Virus record (IMG/VR): IMGVR_UViG_3300026292_000003 | Coordinates: 62,001 to 126,000 of that record | Length of the DNA: 64,000 bases | Direction: 5' to 3' (one strand) | Part shown: positions 29,460-48,143 of the stretch, one piece after another | How positions within the stretch are numbered: the stretch's first letter is position 1 | How the letters are laid out: every line of letters begins with the position of its first letter | Notes under the pieces: generated by a model | Seen by the model: only the letters and a program-made list of their open reading frames with translations | Databases searched by the model: none | Told to the model about the DNA's origin: nothing | Position numbers and translations under genes: made by a program

Positions 29460-30914
29460 ATGTTCGAGCATGATTTCTGGCAACTAAAAAATCACAATAA
29501 AGAAATAACAGTTGGCTGGTTATATAATAATAATATTAAAGATGATTTTGCAAAAGGTTATACAAAAAATTTAACTGATTATTGGAGTGTAGAACTTGCT
29601 CATTTCTTTCCAACTCAATTTGCTGAAGAAACTGTAAATGATTTATTAAAAAAAGCATACGATAATGGGTTTTCAAGTATACTTGTTTTTAAGCAAGGTT
29701 GTACTTTACGTGGACCTAATTTTTTATCAATTTTTAGAAAGTTTCTTGATAAGCATACTGGTGTTAAGTTTATTGGCCATATATTAGATAGAGAAGAAGC
29801 TTACTACGAAATACATCCACAAACATTTTTTATAGATCTTAAATGGTGGGCAGAAGCAGGTTTTCCTGAATGGGGAGAAAGAGATGTGGATTTGCCACTT
29901 GAAACATTAGAGCCAGTACGTAGTGAAGAAAATCATCATGACCAATATACTCCATTATGGATTTGTCCGCCAATAACAAAAAATTTAAAAACATATCAAG
30001 GGCCATTAGGCGAAGGTTGGAATATGGTAAAGGCATTGATAGAATCTGGACAAAAGATAGTATCATGGAATAAAGATTGTAGAATATCAAAACAATATGC
30101 TTATGCAGAAGTTGAAGTAGATGCTCCTAGACACAGAGCAGATCTTTTAGAAGAAGTTAATCAAGACAAATCGTGTTTTGTTGCTAATACTGAAAATGTT
30201 CAAAATCTTGATGATTTTATTAAACAACGTATGCATCAAATGCCAGACTGGAATGGGCGTTTCCAACAAGTAGTAACTCCTGCATCTGGTATTAGTACAC
30301 TTGTATATGCGTTTAAACTAGGTTTAAAAGCAGGTGATAGGATTGTAATATACGATATATCTAAATTTGCTATTGAATATACAGATAAATTAATTAAAGA
30401 ATGGGATGCTAATACTAGTTATACGGAATTTGTATTAAATCAAAAAAAGAATAAACATGGCAACTATAAAGGTATACAACAATTAAGTCATACTGAAGAA
30501 TTAATAGATGAATTAAACAAAGAAGGCTTTTCTGAATGGGTTAATAACGATCTTAGAAAAATAAGTATTGCAACAATGGAAACTGATTTATACAATCAAC
30601 CAGAACATAAAAACTTTCTTAAACCTGTTGATCCTAAATTAATGACATATTTTCATTTTACTAATATATTTCATTATATGCCCTTATCGTTTTATTACAG
30701 TCTAAGGCAAAAATGGCAATTATCTAACGACTTAATTGGTAAAATACAAAATAAATACAGTAAGAACAATAATGCATTAATAAATTTATACAGAGGAACA
30801 TATTGTAATAGCAGAACATTCTCTTCAGCATTTTGGATAGATGATGCAGATACAAGAGAATTTTCTGAAATATCAGGAGATAATATATTTAGGTTATTAA
30901 AATGGAACAAATAG
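29460..30914 (+). CDS. Hypothetical protein; C-terminal half weakly SAM-methyltransferase-like
   Basis: Late promoter CATAAATA 29433; VVTPASG...IVIYDIS...TNIF pattern (weak). Confidence 0.5.
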   Translation: MFEHDFWQLKNHNKEITVGWLYNNNIKDDFAKGYTKNLTDYWSVELAHFFPTQFAEETVNDLLKKAYDNGFSSILVFKQGCTLRGPNFLSIFRKFLDKHTGVKFIGHILDREEAYYEIHPQTFFIDLKWWAEAGFPEWGERDVDLPLETLEPVRSEENHHDQYTPLWICPPITKNLKTYQGPLGEGWNMVKALIESGQKIVSWNKDCRISKQYAYAEVEVDAPRHRADLLEEVNQDKSCFVANTENVQNLDDFIKQRMHQMPDWNGRFQQVVTPASGISTLVYAFKLGLKAGDRIVIYDISKFAIEYTDKLIKEWDANTSYTEFVLNQKKNKHGNYKGIQQLSHTEELIDELNKEGFSEWVNNDLRKISIATMETDLYNQPEHKNFLKPVDPKLMTYFHFTNIFHYMPLSFYYSLRQKWQLSNDLIGKIQNKYSKNNNALINLYRGTYCNSRTFSSAFWIDDADTREFSEISGDNIFRLLKWNK

Positions 30915-31684
30915 AAAAAGATAAAGTGTATTTACGTAATTTAGAAAAAGTAAAAGAGTTTATTACTGGGTGTAAACAAAAAGAACATTATCAAGATTTA
31001 AAAATGCCTAGTGATGAGTTTACTAACTGGAAAACTGATGACCGTGCTAAAATGAAGTATGCAAAATGGGTTATACAAGAAAGTAATTGTCCTAGTTTAC
31101 TTTTAGATATGCCACTTCCTTATAAAGAAATGACAATAGAAGCAGAAAAGTTTCTTGATAGGTTTGTTAAACATAGAGGAGATATACATCCTGGTTGGAG
31201 TAGTATTGCAGTACACGGACAATCCGCAGAAAGAACACAACCTTCAAATTATTATGTAGAAAAAGGAATTGATACTCCAGATAATATACCTCCTTATACT
31301 TGGACAGAAATTGCAAAAGATTGTCCTGCTACAGTAGACTGGTTAAAAAGTTTTCCAATTAAAGAATTCCAAAGAGTAAGATATATGTTATTAGAACCGG
31401 GTGGTTTTATTCAACCACACCAAGACTTTGATAGAAGAAACATGGCCGCATTTAACGTATCTTTAAGTAATCCTCCTGGTGTAGAATTTGCACAAGAAGA
31501 TGCAGGTTTAATACCTTGGGAACCAGGCGAAGCACGTGCTATTGACATAGGCAGAAAGCATTGTGTATGGCACGGAGGAACAGAAAATAGAATTCATATG
31601 ATTATTCATGGTCAATGGGGCGAAGGCTTTGAAGAACTAATTTGTCGTAGTTTTGACCGCCTTTTAGACACAATTAAAACATAA
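30902..31684 (+). CDS. 2OG-Fe(II) oxygenase (Asp/Asn beta-hydroxylase-like)
   Basis: RVRYMLLEPGGFIQPHQD...KHCVWH...NRIHMIIHG. Confidence 0.85.
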   Translation: MEQIEKDKVYLRNLEKVKEFITGCKQKEHYQDLKMPSDEFTNWKTDDRAKMKYAKWVIQESNCPSLLLDMPLPYKEMTIEAEKFLDRFVKHRGDIHPGWSSIAVHGQSAERTQPSNYYVEKGIDTPDNIPPYTWTEIAKDCPATVDWLKSFPIKEFQRVRYMLLEPGGFIQPHQDFDRRNMAAFNVSLSNPPGVEFAQEDAGLIPWEPGEARAIDIGRKHCVWHGGTENRIHMIIHGQWGEGFEELICRSFDRLLDTIKT

Positions 31685-31786: not shown

Positions 31787-34216
31787 ATGGCAAATCTTGT
31801 TTCACCTGGCGTACAGGTAACAGTAACAGACGAATCAGTATACGGCCCAGCAGGCGCTGGTACAGTTCCTATGTTATTCATTGCCACTGGTCAGGACAAG
31901 GTTGATCCAACCCTTACTGAGTCAGACGGCATAGCGAAATACACAAAGTCTGCTAATGCAAACAAACCAATATTAGTTACATCGCAGAGAGAGTTAACTC
32001 AATACTTTGGTAATGTTGACTTCCGTAAGGTAAGTGGAACAGTACAACAAGGTGATGAAACTAACGAATATGGTTTATTAGCGGCATACTCATTTTTAGG
32101 TCAAGCTTCAGCGGCATATATAACACGTGCAGATGTTGACTTAAATGCATTAAGACCGGTTTCATCAGAGCCAACTGGAGATCCAGCAAATTTAACATAC
32201 TGGATTAAACCTTCAACTTCATCTTTTGGTATTTGGAAGTATAGTACTGCAAATACTGAGTGGACTGAACAAACTCCAACAGTTGAAATTACATCAAGTG
32301 GTGCACCTACTGCGGCAGTAGTAGCAGGTGGATATCACGTTGTATTAGAAAATGGTTCAGCTGGAACAACAATAAAATATTTTGCGGCTAGTGGCGGCGC
32401 TTGGGTTGATAATTTTGGCCCAACAATGGCACCACACTATTCAGCACCAAGTTCACCATCAGATGGTGATGTTTGGATTAAAACTACAAAACCAGGTGGT
32501 GGATTGGACTTAGACGTTCAATTATTTACAACATCAGCAGGTAACTTTGTTAAACAAAGTGTAGTTTATGTACAAGACACAGCACCGGCAGGTACAACTT
32601 CAGATGTATTTGCAGACGGTACTTCAGCAACTGCAAGAACATTAACTGACGGAGATATCTGGATGGATATTTCTGCAACTGATGCATCATTAATCTTAAA
32701 CAGATATGATAGTATTGGAAATGGTTTTGATCAGGTTGCAACAGACTCATCAGTAGCAACTGGTGGTTATGTAATGGAAGTTAAAGCAACAGAACCAGTA
32801 GGCGCACCAGCAAATGGTACTATATGGTTTGACCCAGATGTAAATGAATTAGCAATTTACGAAGTAGTAAGCGATTCAGGAACACAAAAATGGCAAAGAG
32901 CATCAGACGTACAATACGTTACAACTGCACCAACAACAGATGGTTCAGGTGGTTCTTTATCAGCAGGTGACTATTGGGTAGATACAGATGCTTCAGGGTA
33001 TCCTGTAATTTACAGACACAATGGTACTGCTTGGGTAGCAAAAGATAAAGCAGATCAATCAACTGCGGCAGGATGTGTATTTGGAGATATTACTGCAAAC
33101 GATACATCAGCAGGCGCATTTGAAGCAACTCTATTAACAGGTGCACCAGATCCGTTAACACACCCAGTAGGTATTACTGGAATTAATATGTGTAGATCAG
33201 GTGGAACAGTTAGAAAATATAATTCAGCTCTAACTACAACTTGGAAATGGAGAGTTGAAGCAGGTAATCAAGCAGATGGCAGTGGTTCATTTGGTAGAAT
33301 TGCACAAAGAAAAGTAGTAGTAACAGCTATGCAGGCGGCGGCAGGCGTAAGTGATCTACAACAAGATACAATTCAATTCCGTTTACTTGCGGCACCAGGT
33401 TATCCTGAACTATATGATGAAATGGTTTCATTAAACAGTAATAGAGATGAAACTGCATTTATCATTGTTGACGCACCATTCCGTTTAAATCCAACAGAAG
33501 CAGTATCTTGGATTCAAGGAACAGGCGCAACTACAAATGGTGAAGGCGGCCTAGTAACAAAGAATACTTACTCAGCAGTTTATTATCCACACGCATACAC
33601 AACTAACCCTGTAACAGGCGATAACGTTGTAGCACCAGCATCACACATTGCATTATACACTTATGCGTATAGTGACAATGTATCATTTCAATGGTTTGCA
33701 CCAGCTGGTCTAACACGTGGTGTTGTACAAAATGCATCAAACGTTGGATACTTAAACAATGAAGATGAGTTTGTGTCATTAGCAGTAACTCAAGGTCAAA
33801 GAGACTCAATGTATGATAAAAAATTAAATCCAATAGCTAAATTTCCTGCAGAAGGTGTTGTAGTATTTGGACAAAAATCATTACACGCGAGTGCTTCAGC
33901 ATTAGACAGAGTTAATGTTGCTAGATTGACAGCTTACCTAAGAGAACGTTTTGCAGTTATTTCAAGACCGTTCTTATTTGAGCCAAATGATGCTAGTACT
34001 AGAGCAAATGCTAAACAAGTATTTGACGGTTTCCTAGCTAATATTTTACAACAACGTGGAATATATGACTTTGCAGTAGTTTGTGATACAACAAACAATA
34101 CACCGGCAAGAATAGATGCCAATGAATTTTACATTGACGTTGCTATTGAGCCAACTAAATCAGCAGAGTTTATTTACATTCCAATTAGAATTGTAAACAC
34201 TGGCGAATTAAGCTAA
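31787..34216 (+). CDS. Tail sheath protein (T4 gp18-like)
   Basis: LVSPGVQV, WFAPAGLTRG, GQKSL..SALDRVNVARL, FEPND, VCDTTNNTPARID, IEPTKSAEFIYIP. Confidence 0.97.
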   Translation: MANLVSPGVQVTVTDESVYGPAGAGTVPMLFIATGQDKVDPTLTESDGIAKYTKSANANKPILVTSQRELTQYFGNVDFRKVSGTVQQGDETNEYGLLAAYSFLGQASAAYITRADVDLNALRPVSSEPTGDPANLTYWIKPSTSSFGIWKYSTANTEWTEQTPTVEITSSGAPTAAVVAGGYHVVLENGSAGTTIKYFAASGGAWVDNFGPTMAPHYSAPSSPSDGDVWIKTTKPGGGLDLDVQLFTTSAGNFVKQSVVYVQDTAPAGTTSDVFADGTSATARTLTDGDIWMDISATDASLILNRYDSIGNGFDQVATDSSVATGGYVMEVKATEPVGAPANGTIWFDPDVNELAIYEVVSDSGTQKWQRASDVQYVTTAPTTDGSGGSLSAGDYWVDTDASGYPVIYRHNGTAWVAKDKADQSTAAGCVFGDITANDTSAGAFEATLLTGAPDPLTHPVGITGINMCRSGGTVRKYNSALTTTWKWRVEAGNQADGSGSFGRIAQRKVVVTAMQAAAGVSDLQQDTIQFRLLAAPGYPELYDEMVSLNSNRDETAFIIVDAPFRLNPTEAVSWIQGTGATTNGEGGLVTKNTYSAVYYPHAYTTNPVTGDNVVAPASHIALYTYAYSDNVSFQWFAPAGLTRGVVQNASNVGYLNNEDEFVSLAVTQGQRDSMYDKKLNPIAKFPAEGVVVFGQKSLHASASALDRVNVARLTAYLRERFAVISRPFLFEPNDASTRANAKQVFDGFLANILQQRGIYDFAVVCDTTNNTPARIDANEFYIDVAIEPTKSAEFIYIPIRIVNTGELS

Positions 34217-34236
34217 TAAGACACTACAAATAAATG

Positions 34237-34378
34237 AAAGGGCTACTATTTTTTAATAGTAGCCTTTTTCTATTTGTAACTATTCGATAAATACTATGCT
34301 ACTATATCGATATAGCAAATACTATCGTGTAAAGATTATGCGATTTTAAATCTTGAAATTTAAGGAGTACTCAAATGG
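34237..34378 (+). repeat. Cassette element copy 1: terminator + late promoter + structured leader + RBS
   Basis: GGGCTACTATT..AATAGTAGCCTTTTTC, TTCGATAAATACTA and TAAGGAGTACTCAAATGG are shared with 35007-35144. Confidence 0.85.
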
Positions 34379-34989
34379 ACGGAAAAAAAATGCACAAATT
34401 TGATTCTCATCATTTCTTTACTGCACTTGGCCATTGTATGCCACTAGACCACTGGTTATCGAAAGAAGCTGGTATGGAACTAGATGCACTTAACAATGAC
34501 GCAAACATGGTTGAGGAGAAAAGAGAAATGGGTAGTGACGATACAGGTAAAATGATGATTCACTATAAGTCAGCACCTACAAAATGGGACTTTGGAGATC
34601 TAAAAACTTCAGAAGCTGGTTACATTGAATATAACAGAGGTCACTTTATTTCACCTCACCGTGATAAGTTACGTAATGTTACTGAACCAAATCAATCAAT
34701 AAGATTAATGTGTTTCCTAAATCATACTCATCCTGAGGAAAATTGTTTTGTCTATGATGGACAAATAACACAATTTGAACCATGCAGATGGTATATGGTA
34801 AACACTCAACGTATGCACTATGGTTTTTCATTTGTTGACGGCGTTAAGCACTTAGGTATTACCCTAAAACTTACTGACGATGCATATGAAGCTACTACAA
34901 AATGGATACTAGATCATACTAATGGCGTACACTCAAAAGGTCATCACCAAACAGGTGAAGGCAGAATGTCAGTTTACAAACCATTCTAA
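34375..34989 (+). CDS. 2OG-Fe(II) oxygenase-like protein
   Basis: ISPHRD...IRLMCFLN...VNTQRMHYG. Confidence 0.7.
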   Translation: MDGKKMHKFDSHHFFTALGHCMPLDHWLSKEAGMELDALNNDANMVEEKREMGSDDTGKMMIHYKSAPTKWDFGDLKTSEAGYIEYNRGHFISPHRDKLRNVTEPNQSIRLMCFLNHTHPEENCFVYDGQITQFEPCRWYMVNTQRMHYGFSFVDGVKHLGITLKLTDDAYEATTKWILDHTNGVHSKGHHQTGEGRMSVYKPF

Positions 34990-35006
34990 TTAGAATATAA
35001 GGAATA

Positions 35007-35144
35007 TAGGGCTACTATTATTATTAATAGTAGCCTTTTTCTTTTCAGTGATTTCGATAAATACTAATGCAAATTGCAAACGCACTTGTAGTCTCAGATG
35101 AGATTGCAAATTTTTAAATTTAAAAATAAGGAGTACTCAAATGG
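35007..35144 (+). repeat. Cassette element copy 2
   Basis: Same terminator, promoter and RBS blocks as 34237-34378. Confidence 0.85.
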
Positions 35145-35458
35145 CAAACGATAATTTCAGGTTTAGAATAATCAAAGCTCCAGGCGGCGAATATTCTACA
35201 GTTGATGCATTTAAGGCTTCTCCAGCTTATGCAAGTATACAAACACTACTTGCTGGCAAGCCAGAGGCTTCTGGTACTATACACGTTTCATATAAATTAT
35301 ATGAAGGTGGCGTGTGGATCAGATATGACTTTGATAATGAAGAAGCTAGATTAGCATATAAACAATATGTTTTAGATGCTGGGTCAGATTTAGGTCAAAA
35401 ACCAAATGAAGTGGGTTTAGACAACGAAACCTTCCCAACATACGGATTCTTAGCATAG
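35141..35458 (+). CDS. Hypothetical late protein
   Basis: Own late promoter and TAAGGAG RBS. Confidence 0.65.
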   Translation: MANDNFRFRIIKAPGGEYSTVDAFKASPAYASIQTLLAGKPEASGTIHVSYKLYEGGVWIRYDFDNEEARLAYKQYVLDAGSDLGQKPNEVGLDNETFPTYGFLA

Positions 35459-35514
35459 CATTTTTCAACAATTTGGCAGGTTACAACTAGTAGCCTGTCA
35501 AATTACCAGTAAAA

Positions 35515-35544
35515 TGGGCTTCTTTTAAAGAAGCCTATCTTTTT
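35515..35544 (+). terminator. Terminator-like hairpin before the tail tube promoter
   Basis: GGCTTCTT-TTA-AAGAAGCC then T-rich run. Confidence 0.6.
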
Positions 35545-35610
35545 GAACACGGATTTGATAAATACAATATAAGATAAACAATACTACAGTAAGTATATAG
35601 GAGAAACAAA

Positions 35611-36219
35611 ATGGCTGTAATTACAAACTTTGGAGTACCGACTGACTCTTCAGCAGGAACAACTTTAATGCCTAAATTAAGTTATAGGTTTAGAGTTACC
35701 TTTGAAGATCTTGGTGGTGCTACAGCGACAGATGAAGTAACTCAGAACGTTATTAGTGCAGGCAGACCGTCAATGACACATGAAGAGGTTGTAGTTGATT
35801 CTTACAACTCAAAAATGTACCTAGCGGGTAAACACGCCTGGGAACCAGTATCAATCGTATTCAGAGATGACATGAAATCTAACGTTATCAAAAAACTTGG
35901 TAACCAATTAAATAGACAAGTTGACCACGCAGATCAACATAGTTCAATTTCAGGTAATGCATATAAATTTGGTGTAACATTAGAAACACTAGATGGTGCA
36001 AATGGTAGTACATCACCAACTGTATTTGACAAATGGGAATTGCAAGGTTGTTATATTTCTAACATTCAATACGGTGACCTAAACTATGCAGATTCAACAA
36101 TGATTCAAGTAACAGTACAACTTCGTTACGATAGTGCGGTTCACTCAATTGATGGTTCAGACGCTTTAAGTGAAAAATCTGCATCTAGCGACTCAGCACA
36201 ATCTGGCGCTACTAGATAA
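35611..36219 (+). CDS. Tail tube protein (T4 gp19-like)
   Basis: PKLSYRFRVTF, YLAGKHAW, W.LQGC, GDLNY, LRYD; late promoter 35557. Confidence 0.88.
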   Translation: MAVITNFGVPTDSSAGTTLMPKLSYRFRVTFEDLGGATATDEVTQNVISAGRPSMTHEEVVVDSYNSKMYLAGKHAWEPVSIVFRDDMKSNVIKKLGNQLNRQVDHADQHSSISGNAYKFGVTLETLDGANGSTSPTVFDKWELQGCYISNIQYGDLNYADSTMIQVTVQLRYDSAVHSIDGSDALSEKSASSDSAQSGATR

Positions 36220-36234
36220 TAAGAGGATTCTTTA

Positions 36235-37104
36235 ATGGCGATCGGCGACTCAGCATATAAAGTCTATAGTCAAGGTCAGCGAAGAGGTGAAATTGACGCA
36301 GTACCAAGAAATAAATATTCTTTTACTGTATCTTTAAATTATATTGATAGCCCAACACCGTTGAGCCTTGTTAGAATTGCAAACGTGCAAATCCCGACCT
36401 ATGTTTTTAGGTCGCAGACATTGAATGCATATAACGCAAAGAAAACTGTTCTTACAGGTATTGATTATACTCCTATAACAATAACCGCTTACGATACTAA
36501 AGATGCAGTTTTTGAAAAATTCTTAAAAGACTATACAGCTCATTATGTTGATGGTCCTTTTAATAATGATGATTATAATGCATTTCTAAATAATCCAAAA
36601 GGAATTAGAACTCCTGAATCTAGAAATTATATTAGAAGTATAATTATTAATAGAAAAGATTCAAAGAATTTAGAAAACGTTATTGAAATATACAATCCTT
36701 ACATTCTTAATATTGATTCTGATACATTAGATTATGCAGATAGTTCTCCAGCAATTTATAGAATTACTTTCACATATGAAGGTTTTAAAATTTTAAGTTC
36801 TGGAAAAGCTACAACTGAAGCAGAAATATTACAAGCAGAAGAATTTATGAATGCACCAACTGCTGATGATGGTTTTGTTGAAGTTGATGACTTTGCAGAA
36901 TATGAAGTAGATGATGCTAATAATATTGATGGCTTACAAACTACAGGCGGTAACGTAACTAGTAACCAAGCACCTTTGAAAAAGGTTGAAACTAAAAATG
37001 ACAATCCAGATAATTTACAAGTATTCAAAGGTAAATTAAAAAAGGGTGAAAAATTAAGAAACATTAATGGTAAATCCTACATAGTGCCGGCTCCAAAGGA
37101 GTAA
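36235..37104 (+). CDS. Tube-like baseplate/tube initiator protein (gp54/gp48-like)
   Basis: Tube-fold pattern (YN.K....GIDY.PITIT.YDT; LDYADS...ITFTYE); follows the tube gene. Confidence 0.6.
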   Translation: MAIGDSAYKVYSQGQRRGEIDAVPRNKYSFTVSLNYIDSPTPLSLVRIANVQIPTYVFRSQTLNAYNAKKTVLTGIDYTPITITAYDTKDAVFEKFLKDYTAHYVDGPFNNDDYNAFLNNPKGIRTPESRNYIRSIIINRKDSKNLENVIEIYNPYILNIDSDTLDYADSSPAIYRITFTYEGFKILSSGKATTEAEILQAEEFMNAPTADDGFVEVDDFAEYEVDDANNIDGLQTTGGNVTSNQAPLKKVETKNDNPDNLQVFKGKLKKGEKLRNINGKSYIVPAPKE

Positions 37105-47868: not shown

Positions 47869-48009
47869 ATGAGAATAATTTGCTATAAATCATATAACGA
47901 TTATATTACACACGATTTTCCAAAAGAAGAATTAGAAGAAATACTGAAAATTTGCAAAGAATTAGAAATAAAATGGTATTGTATTGTGTATGATTCTCAC
48001 CCAGAATAA
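47869..48009 (+). CDS. Putative 46-aa protein (MRIICYKSYNDY...WYCIVYDSHPE)
   Basis: Open frame below the ORF-track cutoff that fills the gap; no clear RBS. Confidence 0.4.
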   Translation: MRIICYKSYNDYITHDFPKEELEEILKICKELEIKWYCIVYDSHPE

Positions 48010-48071
48010 AAAACCCTTATATTTCAAGGGTTTACACATCAAAAAAAATTAAAAAAAAGTGCATAAAAAGG

Positions 48072-48100
48072 TTGACCTTTTCACCAAGATGTCTTATTAT
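48072..48100 (+). promoter_or_regulatory. Sigma70-like early promoter related to the one at 25097
   Basis: TTGACC-N17-TATTAT; shared flanking blocks. Confidence 0.65.
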
Positions 48101-48143
48101 ATATGTATAGTTAGAAAATAAACAATTAAGAAAGAGGTCTCAA

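What the first reader, a model, noticed from the sequence alone, without database searches (positions are those of the whole stretch)
34237..35565. Two self-contained expression cassettes with duplicated regulatory blocks between the sheath and tube genes
Seen: each cassette begins with the same hairpin (GGGCTACTATT..AATAGTAGCCTTTTTC), then TTCGATAAATACTA, a divergent hairpin-containing leader and an identical 18-nt TAAGGAGTACTCAAATGG. The genes that follow are unrelated (an oxygenase-like gene and an unknown). Known: sheath and tube genes are adjacent in T4. Inference: a moron-like insertion hotspot where genes are gained or lost by recombination between repeated terminator/promoter blocks.
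Basis: partly seen in the sequence, partly recalled or inferred. Interest (0 to 1): 0.65.

Follow-up and report, generated by a model that had tools for sequence, protein, structure and literature searches.

The report
Variable accessory-gene slot between sheath and tube
In an uncultured marine jumbo phage, the gap between the tail sheath and tail tube genes holds two small late-expressed accessory genes, each with its own terminator and late promoter; related phages carry 0, 1 or 2 genes in this gap, so it is a real but fairly ordinary recombination hotspot of a known general kind.

Summary
The same terminator hairpin, the 14-nt TTCGATAAATACTA and the 18-nt ribosome-site/start block each occur twice, in register about 770 nt apart. 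The hairpin and the 18-mer occur nowhere else in the 221.6-kb genome.

The blocks are not all special:
- ATAAATAC is this phage's generic T4-type late promoter: 33 copies, 28 intergenic, upstream of adaptor, sheath, tube, terminase and virion genes. The genome encodes a gp55-like late sigma.
- The hairpin is the orthologous sheath terminator, found after the sheath gene in the 66 IMG/VR relatives whose locus includes that spot (L021 has deleted it).

Across relatives the sheath-tube gap holds 0 genes (152-210 nt), 1 gene (466-632 nt) or 2 genes (1241-1330 nt). In two-gene relatives the genes form one operon. Only this genome has a second terminator-promoter copy between them.

Compared with one-gene relatives, the window has a ~770-nt insertion (new leader, orf204, second copy). 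orf204 has a 2OG/Fe(II)-dioxygenase fold. It is 36-39% identical to the resident allele and 74% to a single-cassette homologue in a distant phage. Flanks are 94-100% identical while the cassette genes have saturated synonymous divergence.

Best reading: short-homology recombination between co-infecting relatives, analogous to PeSL or moron shuffling but with late signals. No deletion junctions were seen in contigs.

The parts
31787..34216 (+). Tail sheath gene (809 aa), left conserved flank
   Evidence: phrog_10581 E 9e-203; Pfam Phage_sheath_1C E 3e-13. The 3' 600 nt are 94-98% identical to group-A relatives.
34236..34270 (+). Terminator copy 1: the orthologous sheath terminator hairpin plus T-run
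   Evidence: Fold -18.8 kcal/mol, z -5.9. Terminator-like scan. Present once after the sheath gene in 66 related loci.
34283..34296 (+). Late-promoter block copy 1 (TTCGATAAATACTA; core ATAAATAC at 34287-34294)
   Evidence: ATAAATAC occurs 33 times in the genome, 28 intergenic and 29 on the + strand, 16-120 nt upstream of starts. It sits upstream of structural genes. A late sigma factor is encoded in the genome.
34297..34360 (+). Leader A, specific to the orf204 cassette, with two small hairpins. It does not match the leader conserved in relatives.
   Evidence: Alignment, fold (z -0.4), comparison with relatives.
34361..34378 (+). Ribosome-site/start block copy 1 (TAAGGAGTACTCAAATGG)
   Evidence: Only two copies in the genome. 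A similar block precedes the orf204 homologue in L081.
34375..34989 (+). orf204: 2OG/Fe(II)-dioxygenase-fold protein (conserved HxD...H), a divergent allele
   Evidence: All top 50 VIA matches are Fe/2OG dioxygenases, Z 5.8-8.3. Foldseek top hits are P4H, ALKBH and AspH at E about 0.01. PHRD and a distal His are invariant. Distant relative P0023 passes Pfam PF05118. 36-39% identical to the orf222 alleles, 74% to L081. Only 20 relatives among 1.84 billion representatives.
35008..35041 (+). Terminator copy 2: same stem, longer loop
   Evidence: Fold -19.2 kcal/mol, z -5.7; scan. A contig from an independent run links the orf204 stop to this hairpin with 0 mismatches (record 7).
35053..35066 (+). 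Late-promoter block copy 2
   Evidence: Identical 14-mer; generic late motif.
35067..35126 (+). Leader B: the leader conserved in all cassette-bearing relatives (TGCAAATTGCA palindrome, then a terminator-like hairpin at 35086-35109 with a U-run)
   Evidence: Alignment A6, terminator-like scan, comparison.
35127..35144 (+). Ribosome-site/start block copy 2. Its TAA corresponds to the stop codon of the resident large gene in operon-type relatives.
   Evidence: Relatives read TAAGGAGAACTAAAATGG at the orf222-orf105 junction. The window differs at 2 positions, and both match copy 1.
35141..35458 (+). orf105: small alpha/beta (ferredoxin-like) protein of unknown function, highly variable family
   Evidence: Model pLDDT 84; no specific structural match, best Z 5.5; no Pfam or PHROG hit. 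55-89% identity among phages whose flanks are 96-100% identical; dS 0.4 to above 1.5.
35470..35504 (+). Strong hairpin without a U-run downstream of orf105
   Evidence: -20.1 kcal/mol, z -7.3. Present with changed stem letters in group-A relatives.
35514..35545 (+). Terminator T3 (unrelated stem), right boundary of the variable region
   Evidence: Fold -15 kcal/mol, z -4.2; scan. 90-100% identical to group-A relatives, while the sequence to its left drops to 45-74%.
35554..35567 (+). Late promoter of the tube gene (TTTGATAAATACAA)
35611..36219 (+). Tail tube gene (202 aa), right conserved flank
   Evidence: phrog_4542 E 2e-50. 96-100% aa identity to group-A relatives.

Best explanation
The sheath-tube gap of this marine jumbo myovirus lineage is a recombination-prone accessory slot that normally holds a late bicistronic operon.

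Normal layout in relatives: sheath terminator, gp55-type late promoter, conserved leader, a 2OG/Fe(II)-oxygenase-like gene, a small ferredoxin-like gene, a second terminator, then the tube promoter.

Inferred history in the window's phage:
1. The resident oxygenase gene was lost by a join between the two ribosome sites.
2. A very divergent oxygenase allele (orf204), with its own leader and ribosome site, was joined in by short-homology (unequal) recombination with a co-infecting relative.
3. The joint lies at the stop codon of orf204 and the stop codon of a sheath gene.
4. As a result, the ~80 nt that normally follow the sheath gene (spacer, terminator, late promoter) now occur twice, once before and once after orf204.

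Inferred consequence: both genes are now separate monocistronic late units. Promoter 34287 would run to the terminator at 35008-35041, and promoter 35057 to the terminator at 35514-35545.

Shown: the anatomy, the variation among relatives, the insertion boundaries, the allele divergence and the fold of orf204.
Inferred: promoter and terminator activity, the order of events and the recombination mechanism.
For: - Block anatomy and uniqueness.
- Late-promoter nature of ATAAATAC: 33 sites, 28 intergenic; located upstream of adaptor, sheath, tube, terminase and virion genes; late sigma factor phrog_12791 at E 3e-89.
- The hairpin is the orthologous sheath terminator, with one copy in 66 related loci and two only in this genome's own copies.
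- Interval length falls into three classes: 152-210, 466-632 and 1241-1397 nt.
- Relatives with two genes are operons joined by TAAGGAGAACTAAAATGG.
- The single terminator-promoter block of one-gene relatives aligns to both window copies, so the window equals that backbone plus about 770 nt.
- The conserved leader sits in cassette 2, not cassette 1.
- Homology to the sheath-downstream spacer starts right at the orf204 stop codon.
- The two copies are 84% alike. This is no closer than each is to the same block in other genomes (74-88%), so they look like two alleles.
- Flanks have dS 0.04-0.36, against dS at least 1.9 for orf204 and 0.95 to saturated for orf105; flanks are 94-100% identical against 45-74% inside the interval.
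- orf204's nearest relative (74%) sits alone in the same slot of another phage, with unrelated terminators.
- Independent deletions in relatives have junctions in the regulatory motifs: L021 vs L019 at AAGG; one-gene forms keep a relic of the orf222 start; empty cassettes occur in L056, L073 and L080.
Against: - No transcript data: promoter, terminator and monocistronic expression are predicted from sequence only.
- No donor genome carrying orf204 next to a sheath-type terminator was found.
- The proposed junction microhomology is only about 4-5 nt and the allele comparison rests on about 80 nt, so the direction and mechanism of the event are not proven.
- Only one genome (possibly assembled twice from one sample) shows the full duplicated arrangement. 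Contigs from independent runs cover orf204 and orf105 but do not bridge 35031-35059.
Confidence: 0.68

Rival explanations
1. Mini-circle route, as proposed for PeSL elements. A small circular DNA carrying one terminator-promoter block plus leader A and orf204 integrated by homologous recombination into the resident block after the sheath gene. This would duplicate the block on both sides of the insert, and the reverse reaction could excise orf204 again.
For: - The product structure (block, insert, block) is exactly what Campbell-type integration gives.
- PeSL mini-circles were shown physically in phages phi1 and RB49 (PMC2839356).
- The genome also carries PeSL-like early blocks elsewhere.
Against: - The perfect identity stretches are short (17, 14 and 11 nt) and the copies are only 84% alike.
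- The spacer upstream of copy 2 begins at the orf204 stop codon, which fits an end-to-end unequal join equally well.
- No circle or excision junction was found in contigs, though contigs cannot show rare forms.
Confidence: 0.15
2. In-place tandem duplication of the whole regulatory region within this genome, followed by divergence. Only the functional blocks would have been kept identical by selection, and orf204 would be a fast-evolved resident gene.
For: - The identical blocks are the functional parts (stem, T-run, promoter, ribosome site) and the unlike parts are spacers.
- The last 40 nt before the two start codons are 78% alike.
Against: - The copies are no more alike than alleles from different genomes.
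- The conserved leader lies only in copy 2.
- orf204 has saturated dS and 36-39% identity to a resident allele that otherwise tracks the backbone at 83-94%, while flanking dS is 0.06-0.36.
- orf204's ribosome site and N-terminus match its homologue in L081.
Confidence: 0.07
3. Assembly chimera: two strain variants (one with orf204, one with orf105 in the slot) were joined by the assembler through the shared blocks.
For: - The arrangement is seen in only one genome.
- Contigs from other runs break near the repeated blocks.
Against: - The longest perfectly shared stretches are 18 nt or less, shorter than the 31-mers of Logan contigs, so the blocks create no graph ambiguity.
- One 16,950-nt contig of the source run covers 33600-36300 with no difference (record 1).
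- A contig from an independent run joins the orf204 3' end to the copy-2-specific spacer and loop with 0 mismatches (record 7).
- Another runs from promoter copy 2 into orf105 (record 22).
Confidence: 0.04
4. Nothing special: the likeness of the two regions is only convergence on generic late signals, with no shared origin and no role in gene flux.
For: The promoter core is generic. Terminator-then-late-promoter pairs with unrelated hairpins occur at other genes.
Against: - The hairpin stem is identical over 11+10 nt and unique to these two sites.
- The spacer before copy 2 is homologous to the spacer that follows the sheath gene in relatives.
- The interval is clearly variable in relatives.
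Confidence: 0.04

Closest known systems
PeSL (promoter-early stem-loop) regulatory cassettes of T4-type phages (Arbiol et al. 2010, PMC2839356; Comeau et al. 2014, PMC4122927)
   Same: - A composite terminator stem-loop plus promoter plus ribosome site flanks small accessory ORFs.
- Close relatives differ by insertion, deletion or replacement of the flanked ORF.
- A genome with the block on both sides of an ORF pairs with a relative that has a single block.
   Different: - PeSLs carry sigma-70-type early promoters. Here the promoter is the T4-late-type ATAAATAC.
- PeSLs number about 50 per genome, mostly in hyperplastic non-structural regions. This hairpin has only two copies and sits inside the tail module.
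- Mini-circles have not been shown here.
- The same genome does hold PeSL-like early blocks elsewhere.
Morons of lambdoid phages
   Same: An independent transcription unit with its own promoter and terminator sits between two genes that are adjacent in relatives.
   Different: - Classic morons are expressed from the prophage and often differ in base composition. Here the signals are late lytic ones.
- The composition difference is slight (GC3 0.27 vs 0.17-0.23).
- The cargo belongs to gene families that are resident at this locus.
T4 late promoters (TATAAATA, read by gp55 with gp33 and gp45; general knowledge; T4 record annotations)
   Same: An A/T-rich octamer matches 7 of the 8 letters, lies upstream of structural genes on the coding strand, and a gp55-like late sigma is encoded.
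   Different: The consensus here is (G)ATAAATAC rather than TATAAATA. Activity and start sites are untested.
Homing-endonuclease insertion between sheath and tube in Pseudomonas phage PA5oct
   Same: The same intergenic position in a distantly related jumbo phage (sheath 37% identical) holds an extra gene. GAP32 has none.
   Different: The cargo there is a self-mobile Hef-like endonuclease. No endonuclease is present here.

Membership tests
PeSL regulatory cassette | Strong sigma-70-like early promoter (-35/-10) in the block | tested here: not met
   Sigma-70 scan of 33800-36000 found 9 sites against 9.5 expected, none in the blocks. The block carries ATAAATAC instead.
PeSL regulatory cassette | Stem-loop acting as terminator or attenuator next to the promoter | tested here: met
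   Stable hairpins with T-runs lie 12-13 nt upstream of the promoter block. This is a sequence-level test only.
PeSL regulatory cassette | Block repeated many times, concentrated in hyperplastic regions | tested here: not met
   The hairpin and ribosome-site blocks occur only twice. Only the promoter core is frequent.
PeSL regulatory cassette | Flanks ORFs that are present or absent between close relatives | tested here: met
   One-gene relatives have one block where the window has block, orf204, block.
PeSL regulatory cassette | Excised mini-circles | not testable with these tools
   Only contigs could be laid and no joints were seen. Contigs drop rare forms.
Moron | Own promoter and terminator; inserted between genes that are adjacent in relatives | tested here: met
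   Predicted signals. Sheath and tube are 152-155 nt apart in many relatives.
Moron | Expression independent of the surrounding operon (for example from a prophage) and foreign base composition | tested here: inconclusive
   The late-type promoter is the same as for neighbouring genes. GC3 is 0.27 against 0.17-0.23. No expression data.
T4-type late promoter | TATAAATA-like element upstream of late genes | tested here: met
   ATAAATAC lies 16-120 nt upstream of structural genes with strong strand bias. GATAAATAC occurs 8 times against 1.1 expected.
T4-type late promoter | Phage-encoded gp55-type sigma | tested here: met
   L087:985-1869 matches phrog_12791 'sigma factor for late transcription' at E 3e-89. 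T4 gp55 hits it weakly at E 2e-4.
T4-type late promoter | Transcription starts a few bases downstream, late in infection | not testable with these tools
   No RNA runs hold the sequence (0 RNA rows).
2OG/Fe(II)-dependent dioxygenase superfamily (orf204) | Double-stranded beta-helix fold | tested here: met
   All top 50 VIA matches are Fe/2OG dioxygenases, Z up to 8.3 over 153 residues. The model is only moderate: pLDDT 63, pTM 0.68.
2OG/Fe(II)-dependent dioxygenase superfamily (orf204) | HxD/E...H iron-binding triad | tested here: met
   H95-R-D97 and H148 are invariant in 9 homologues.
2OG/Fe(II)-dependent dioxygenase superfamily (orf204) | Significant match to a family profile | tested here: inconclusive
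   orf204 itself scores only E 0.076 against PF13640. Its distant relative P0023 passes the PF05118 cut-off (26.1 vs 22.6 bits).

The most novel reading that the evidence does not exclude
The sheath-terminator/late-promoter block and the shared ribosome-site block may act as a dedicated exchange point, a late-gene counterpart of PeSLs placed inside the tail module. Co-infecting marine jumbo phages would use it to swap alleles of a fast-turning accessory pair (a protein-hydroxylase-like enzyme and a small partner protein). That pair might act on tail proteins or on a host system that senses them, which would make the slot an arms-race locus.
Probability: 0.2. Interest if true: 0.6.

Novelty: new variant of a known kind. 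Interest (0 to 1): 0.4.

Why it matters
This is a clean natural example of how accessory genes enter and leave the otherwise conserved structural module of large uncultured marine phages.
- Conserved transcription signals mark the edges of a segment whose genes have far deeper ancestry than their flanks.
- One genome has caught the block-insert-block state that the PeSL and moron models predict, but with late-type signals.
- It defines a small, testable pair of late accessory proteins (a 2OG-oxygenase-like enzyme and a 100-aa partner) that sits next to the sheath and tube genes in many ocean phages.

It does not reveal a new mechanism.

Tried and rejected
- Nucleotide search of GenBank phages with 33000-37000: no match. 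The closest sheath proteins are only 37-41% identical (PA5oct, Atu_ph07, Rak2-like phages).
- orf105: no hit by tblastn in phages, Pfam, PHROGs or fold search. Function left open.
- orf204 as a paralogue of the neighbouring PF05118 hydroxylase (30902-31684): only a weak local match around the HxD motif, E 0.04. Not a recent paralogue.
- Search for an orf204 donor context: IMG/VR and JGI metagenome scans returned only this genome's own copies. The exhaustive representative search gave 20 relatives, only one above 41% identity.
- Deletion junctions in reads: all four runs are kept as contigs and show no joints. This is uninformative about rare variants.
- Known RNA families in the leaders: nothing near any gathering score.
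- Covariation in the leader-B hairpin: only 1 compensatory pair, so support is weak.
- Assembly chimera and pure convergence: considered and judged unlikely (see the rival explanations).
Full report
**1. What is there**

The window is part of a single 221,643-bp contig with 33.6% G+C, from a marine metagenome.

Genes in the region:
- 31787-34216 encodes a tail sheath protein.
- 35611-36219 and 36235-37104 encode two tail tube paralogues.
- Between sheath and tube lie two ORFs on the same strand: orf204 (34375-34989) and orf105 (35141-35458). They are unrelated to each other.

Each ORF is preceded by the same set of elements:
- a strong hairpin with a T-run, at 34236-34270 and 35008-35041. The stems are identical and the loops differ. 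Folding energies are -18.8 and -19.2 kcal/mol with z about -5.8, and both are scored terminator-like;
- 12-13 unlike bases;
- the 14-mer TTCGATAAATACTA;
- a 64-nt or 60-nt leader;
- the 18-mer TAAGGAGTACTCAAATGG, which contains the ribosome site and the start codon.

A third, unrelated terminator (35514-35545) and TTTGATAAATACAA (35554-35567) precede the tube gene. In the whole genome the hairpin arm and the 18-mer occur only at these two places.

**2. Which blocks are generic**

The core ATAAATAC is a genome-wide motif:
- It occurs 33 times in the genome: 28 are intergenic, 29 are on the + strand, and they typically lie 16-120 nt upstream of a start codon.
- In the window it precedes the head-tail adaptor, sheath, tube, large terminase and two virion-protein genes.
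- It matches 7 of the 8 letters of the T4 late promoter TATAAATA (general knowledge).
- The genome encodes a late sigma factor: L087:985-1869 matches phrog_12791 at E 3e-89, and T4 gp55 hits the same ORF weakly.

So the promoter block is the phage's ordinary late signal. Other late genes also have a hairpin just upstream of this motif, but with unrelated stems.

**3. Relatives**

A scan of IMG/VR with the tube protein returned 80 loci from many marine samples, at 67-100% tube identity. I located the sheath end and the tube start in each. The interval falls into three size classes:

| Interval (nt) | Content | Where found |
|---|---|---|
| 152-210 | no gene | tube identity 67-74% |
| 466-632 | an orf105 homologue only | closer relatives |
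| 1241-1330 (1397 in the window's own copy, L040) | a large gene (221-222 aa, homologous to orf204) plus an orf105 homologue | closer relatives |

The sheath hairpin is present once, right after the sheath gene, in 66 loci. Of the 14 loci where the pattern found none, most do not reach the sheath end, two or three carry a stem variant the pattern missed, L021 has deleted the hairpin, and L081 is a distant phage with an unrelated hairpin. Only this genome's own copies have two. The hairpin is thus the orthologous sheath terminator, not a mobile repeat.

In every other two-gene relative the two genes form one operon. Its layout is terminator, late promoter, conserved leader (TGCAAATTGCA palindrome, then a hairpin with a U-run), large gene, stop codon TAA fused to the next ribosome site (TAAGGAGAACTAAAATGG), small gene. 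There is no terminator or promoter between the genes.

**4. How the window differs**

- One-gene relatives (L001, L002, L016, L008) align with the window from the sheath gene to 34299, and again from 34995-35013 onward. Their single terminator-promoter block matches both window copies. The window therefore equals such a backbone plus about 770 nt: leader A, ribosome site, orf204 and a second copy of spacer, terminator and promoter.
- The leader conserved in all relatives lies in cassette 2. Leader A is new.
- Homology of copy 2 to the spacer that normally follows the sheath stop codon begins at the orf204 stop codon.
- The two copies are 84% alike. Each is about equally similar to the same block in other genomes (74-88%), so they look like two alleles brought together rather than a fresh internal duplication.
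- In cassette 2 the conserved leader runs directly into TAAGGAG. The resident large gene and its own ribosome site are missing, which points to an earlier join between the two ribosome sites.

**5. Depth of divergence**

- Compared with group-A relatives, the sheath 3' end is 94-98% identical in DNA.
- The region from terminator T3 through the tube gene is 89-100% identical.
- Everything from the sheath stop to T3 is only 45-74% identical, apart from the hairpin (76-94% across its whole length, loop included) and the promoter block.
- Synonymous divergence is 0.04-0.36 in the flanks. For orf105 it is 0.95 to saturated between the window and its relatives, and 0.4-0.7 among the relatives themselves. 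For orf204 against the resident large gene it is at least 1.9.
- The resident large gene otherwise tracks the backbone (83-94% among relatives), while orf204 is 36-39% identical to all of those alleles.
- Its one close relative (74% identical) lies on a 942-nt contig of another phage. There it is the only gene between sheath and tube, with unrelated terminators but a similar ribosome-site/start region.
- An exhaustive search of 1.84 billion representatives found only 20 relatives.

These data show import of divergent alleles by recombination, not fast change in place.

**6. Losses in relatives**

- L021 is identical to L019 in its flanks but lacks 784 nt (terminator, promoter, leader and large gene). 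The joint lies at AAGG, which is shared by the foot of the terminator and the ribosome site.
- Group-A one-gene forms retain what looks like the first codons of the large gene fused to the small gene's ribosome site.
- L056, L073 and L080 retain a promoter but no gene between it and the tube promoter; L056 and L073 also keep half of the second terminator. These are 'empty cassettes'.

Gene loss at this slot has thus happened several times, with joints in or next to the regulatory motifs. In these cases the joints used microhomology, not recombination between two terminator-promoter copies.

**7. Is the arrangement real?**

- The longest perfectly shared stretches (18 nt or less) are shorter than the 31-mers used for the public contigs, so they cannot cause a false join.
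- One 16,950-nt contig of the probable source run covers 33600-36300 without a difference.
- In other studies' runs, contigs with zero differences link the orf204 3' end to the copy-2-specific spacer and loop (34455-35030), and link promoter copy 2 to orf105 (35060-35432).
- Runs X2 and X3 look like one data set filed twice and are counted once.
- No contig from an independent run bridges 35031-35059.
- No joints were reported. All runs were contigs, so rare deletion forms could not be seen.

**8. The genes**

orf204:
- It has no significant family hit of its own.
- Its model (pLDDT 63, pTM 0.68) matches only Fe(II)/2OG dioxygenases among the top 50 by VIA-align (Z 5.8-8.3), and mainly such enzymes by Foldseek.
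- H95, D97 and H148 are invariant in nine homologues.
- One distant relative passes the Pfam aspartyl/asparaginyl hydroxylase threshold.
- I read it as a 2OG-oxygenase-fold enzyme of unknown substrate.

orf105:
- It folds confidently (pLDDT 84) into a small ferredoxin-like alpha/beta domain with no specific match.
- Its function is unknown.
- Among close alleles dN/dS is about 0.15-0.4, which means it is constrained but variable.

**9. Comparison with known systems**

- The closest described system is the PeSL cassette of T4-type phages. PeSLs are terminator/promoter composites that flank ORFans and mediate insertion, deletion and replacement, including via mini-circles (PMC2839356; PMC4122927).
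- The present case shares the block-ORF-block against single-block pattern. It differs in using a late promoter, in lying inside the tail module (where the PeSL authors say such elements are rare), and in having only two copies.
- It also fits the moron idea in form.
- In PA5oct the same slot holds a homing endonuclease.

**10. Verdict**

- The finding is real.
- The inference overstates how special and how repeated the blocks are.
- It is a new variant of a known kind of phage genome plasticity, of moderate interest.

Noticed in passing
window 48007-48120; also genome 145793, 148159, 212949 and 214230 (outside the window): A much stronger repeated intergenic family. It is a ~50-nt sigma-70-like promoter block (GGTTGACA/C, 17 nt, TATTAT) with a conserved leader and ribosome site, 88-100% identical at five sites. 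Several of the copies have a hairpin of the type AAACCCTT...AAGGGTTT shortly upstream. These look like true PeSL-type early cassettes.
   Followed up: partly
window 35067-35126: The leader conserved in all cassette-bearing relatives has a TGCAAATTGCA palindrome (unique in the genome) just after the late promoter. It also has a terminator-like hairpin with a U-run (35086-35109) before the ribosome site, a possible attenuator or 5' stabiliser. Only one compensatory pair was found.
   Followed up: partly
window 35470-35504: A very stable hairpin without a U-run (-20.1 kcal/mol, z -7.3) lies between orf105 and terminator T3. Group-A relatives keep it with changed letters on both stem arms, for example GGCAGG/CCTGTC against AGTGGG/CCACTA. 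Its role is unknown.
   Followed up: partly
window 30902-31684: A second cupin/2OG-type gene (Pfam Asp_Arg_Hydrox, E 5e-10) lies immediately upstream of the sheath gene. It is only weakly similar to orf204 around the HxD motif.
   Followed up: partly
L021:2471-2938 compared with L019:3360-4611: Two otherwise identical relatives differ by a 784-nt deletion that removes terminator, promoter, leader and the large gene. The joint is at the 4-nt AAGG, and the small gene is left without its own promoter.
   Followed up: yes
L056:1360-1564, L073:5790-6001, L080:4764-4961: 'Empty cassettes' in more distant relatives: sheath terminator and late promoter with no gene before the tube promoter; L056 and L073 also keep the 3' half of the second terminator.
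   Followed up: partly
L084 (PA5oct, NC_071039.1 121410-123026): A Hef-like homing endonuclease sits between sheath and tube in a distantly related jumbo phage. GAP32 has nothing there. The sheath-tube gap may be a recurrent insertion site in large myoviruses.
   Followed up: no
L087:985-1869 (genome 38691-39575, outside the window): A late sigma factor gene (phrog_12791, E 3e-89). At 294 aa it is longer than T4 gp55 (185 aa).
   Followed up: partly
window 35611-36219 and 36235-37104: Two adjacent tube-protein paralogues, both matching phrog_4542, as in PA5oct and GAP32.
   Followed up: no
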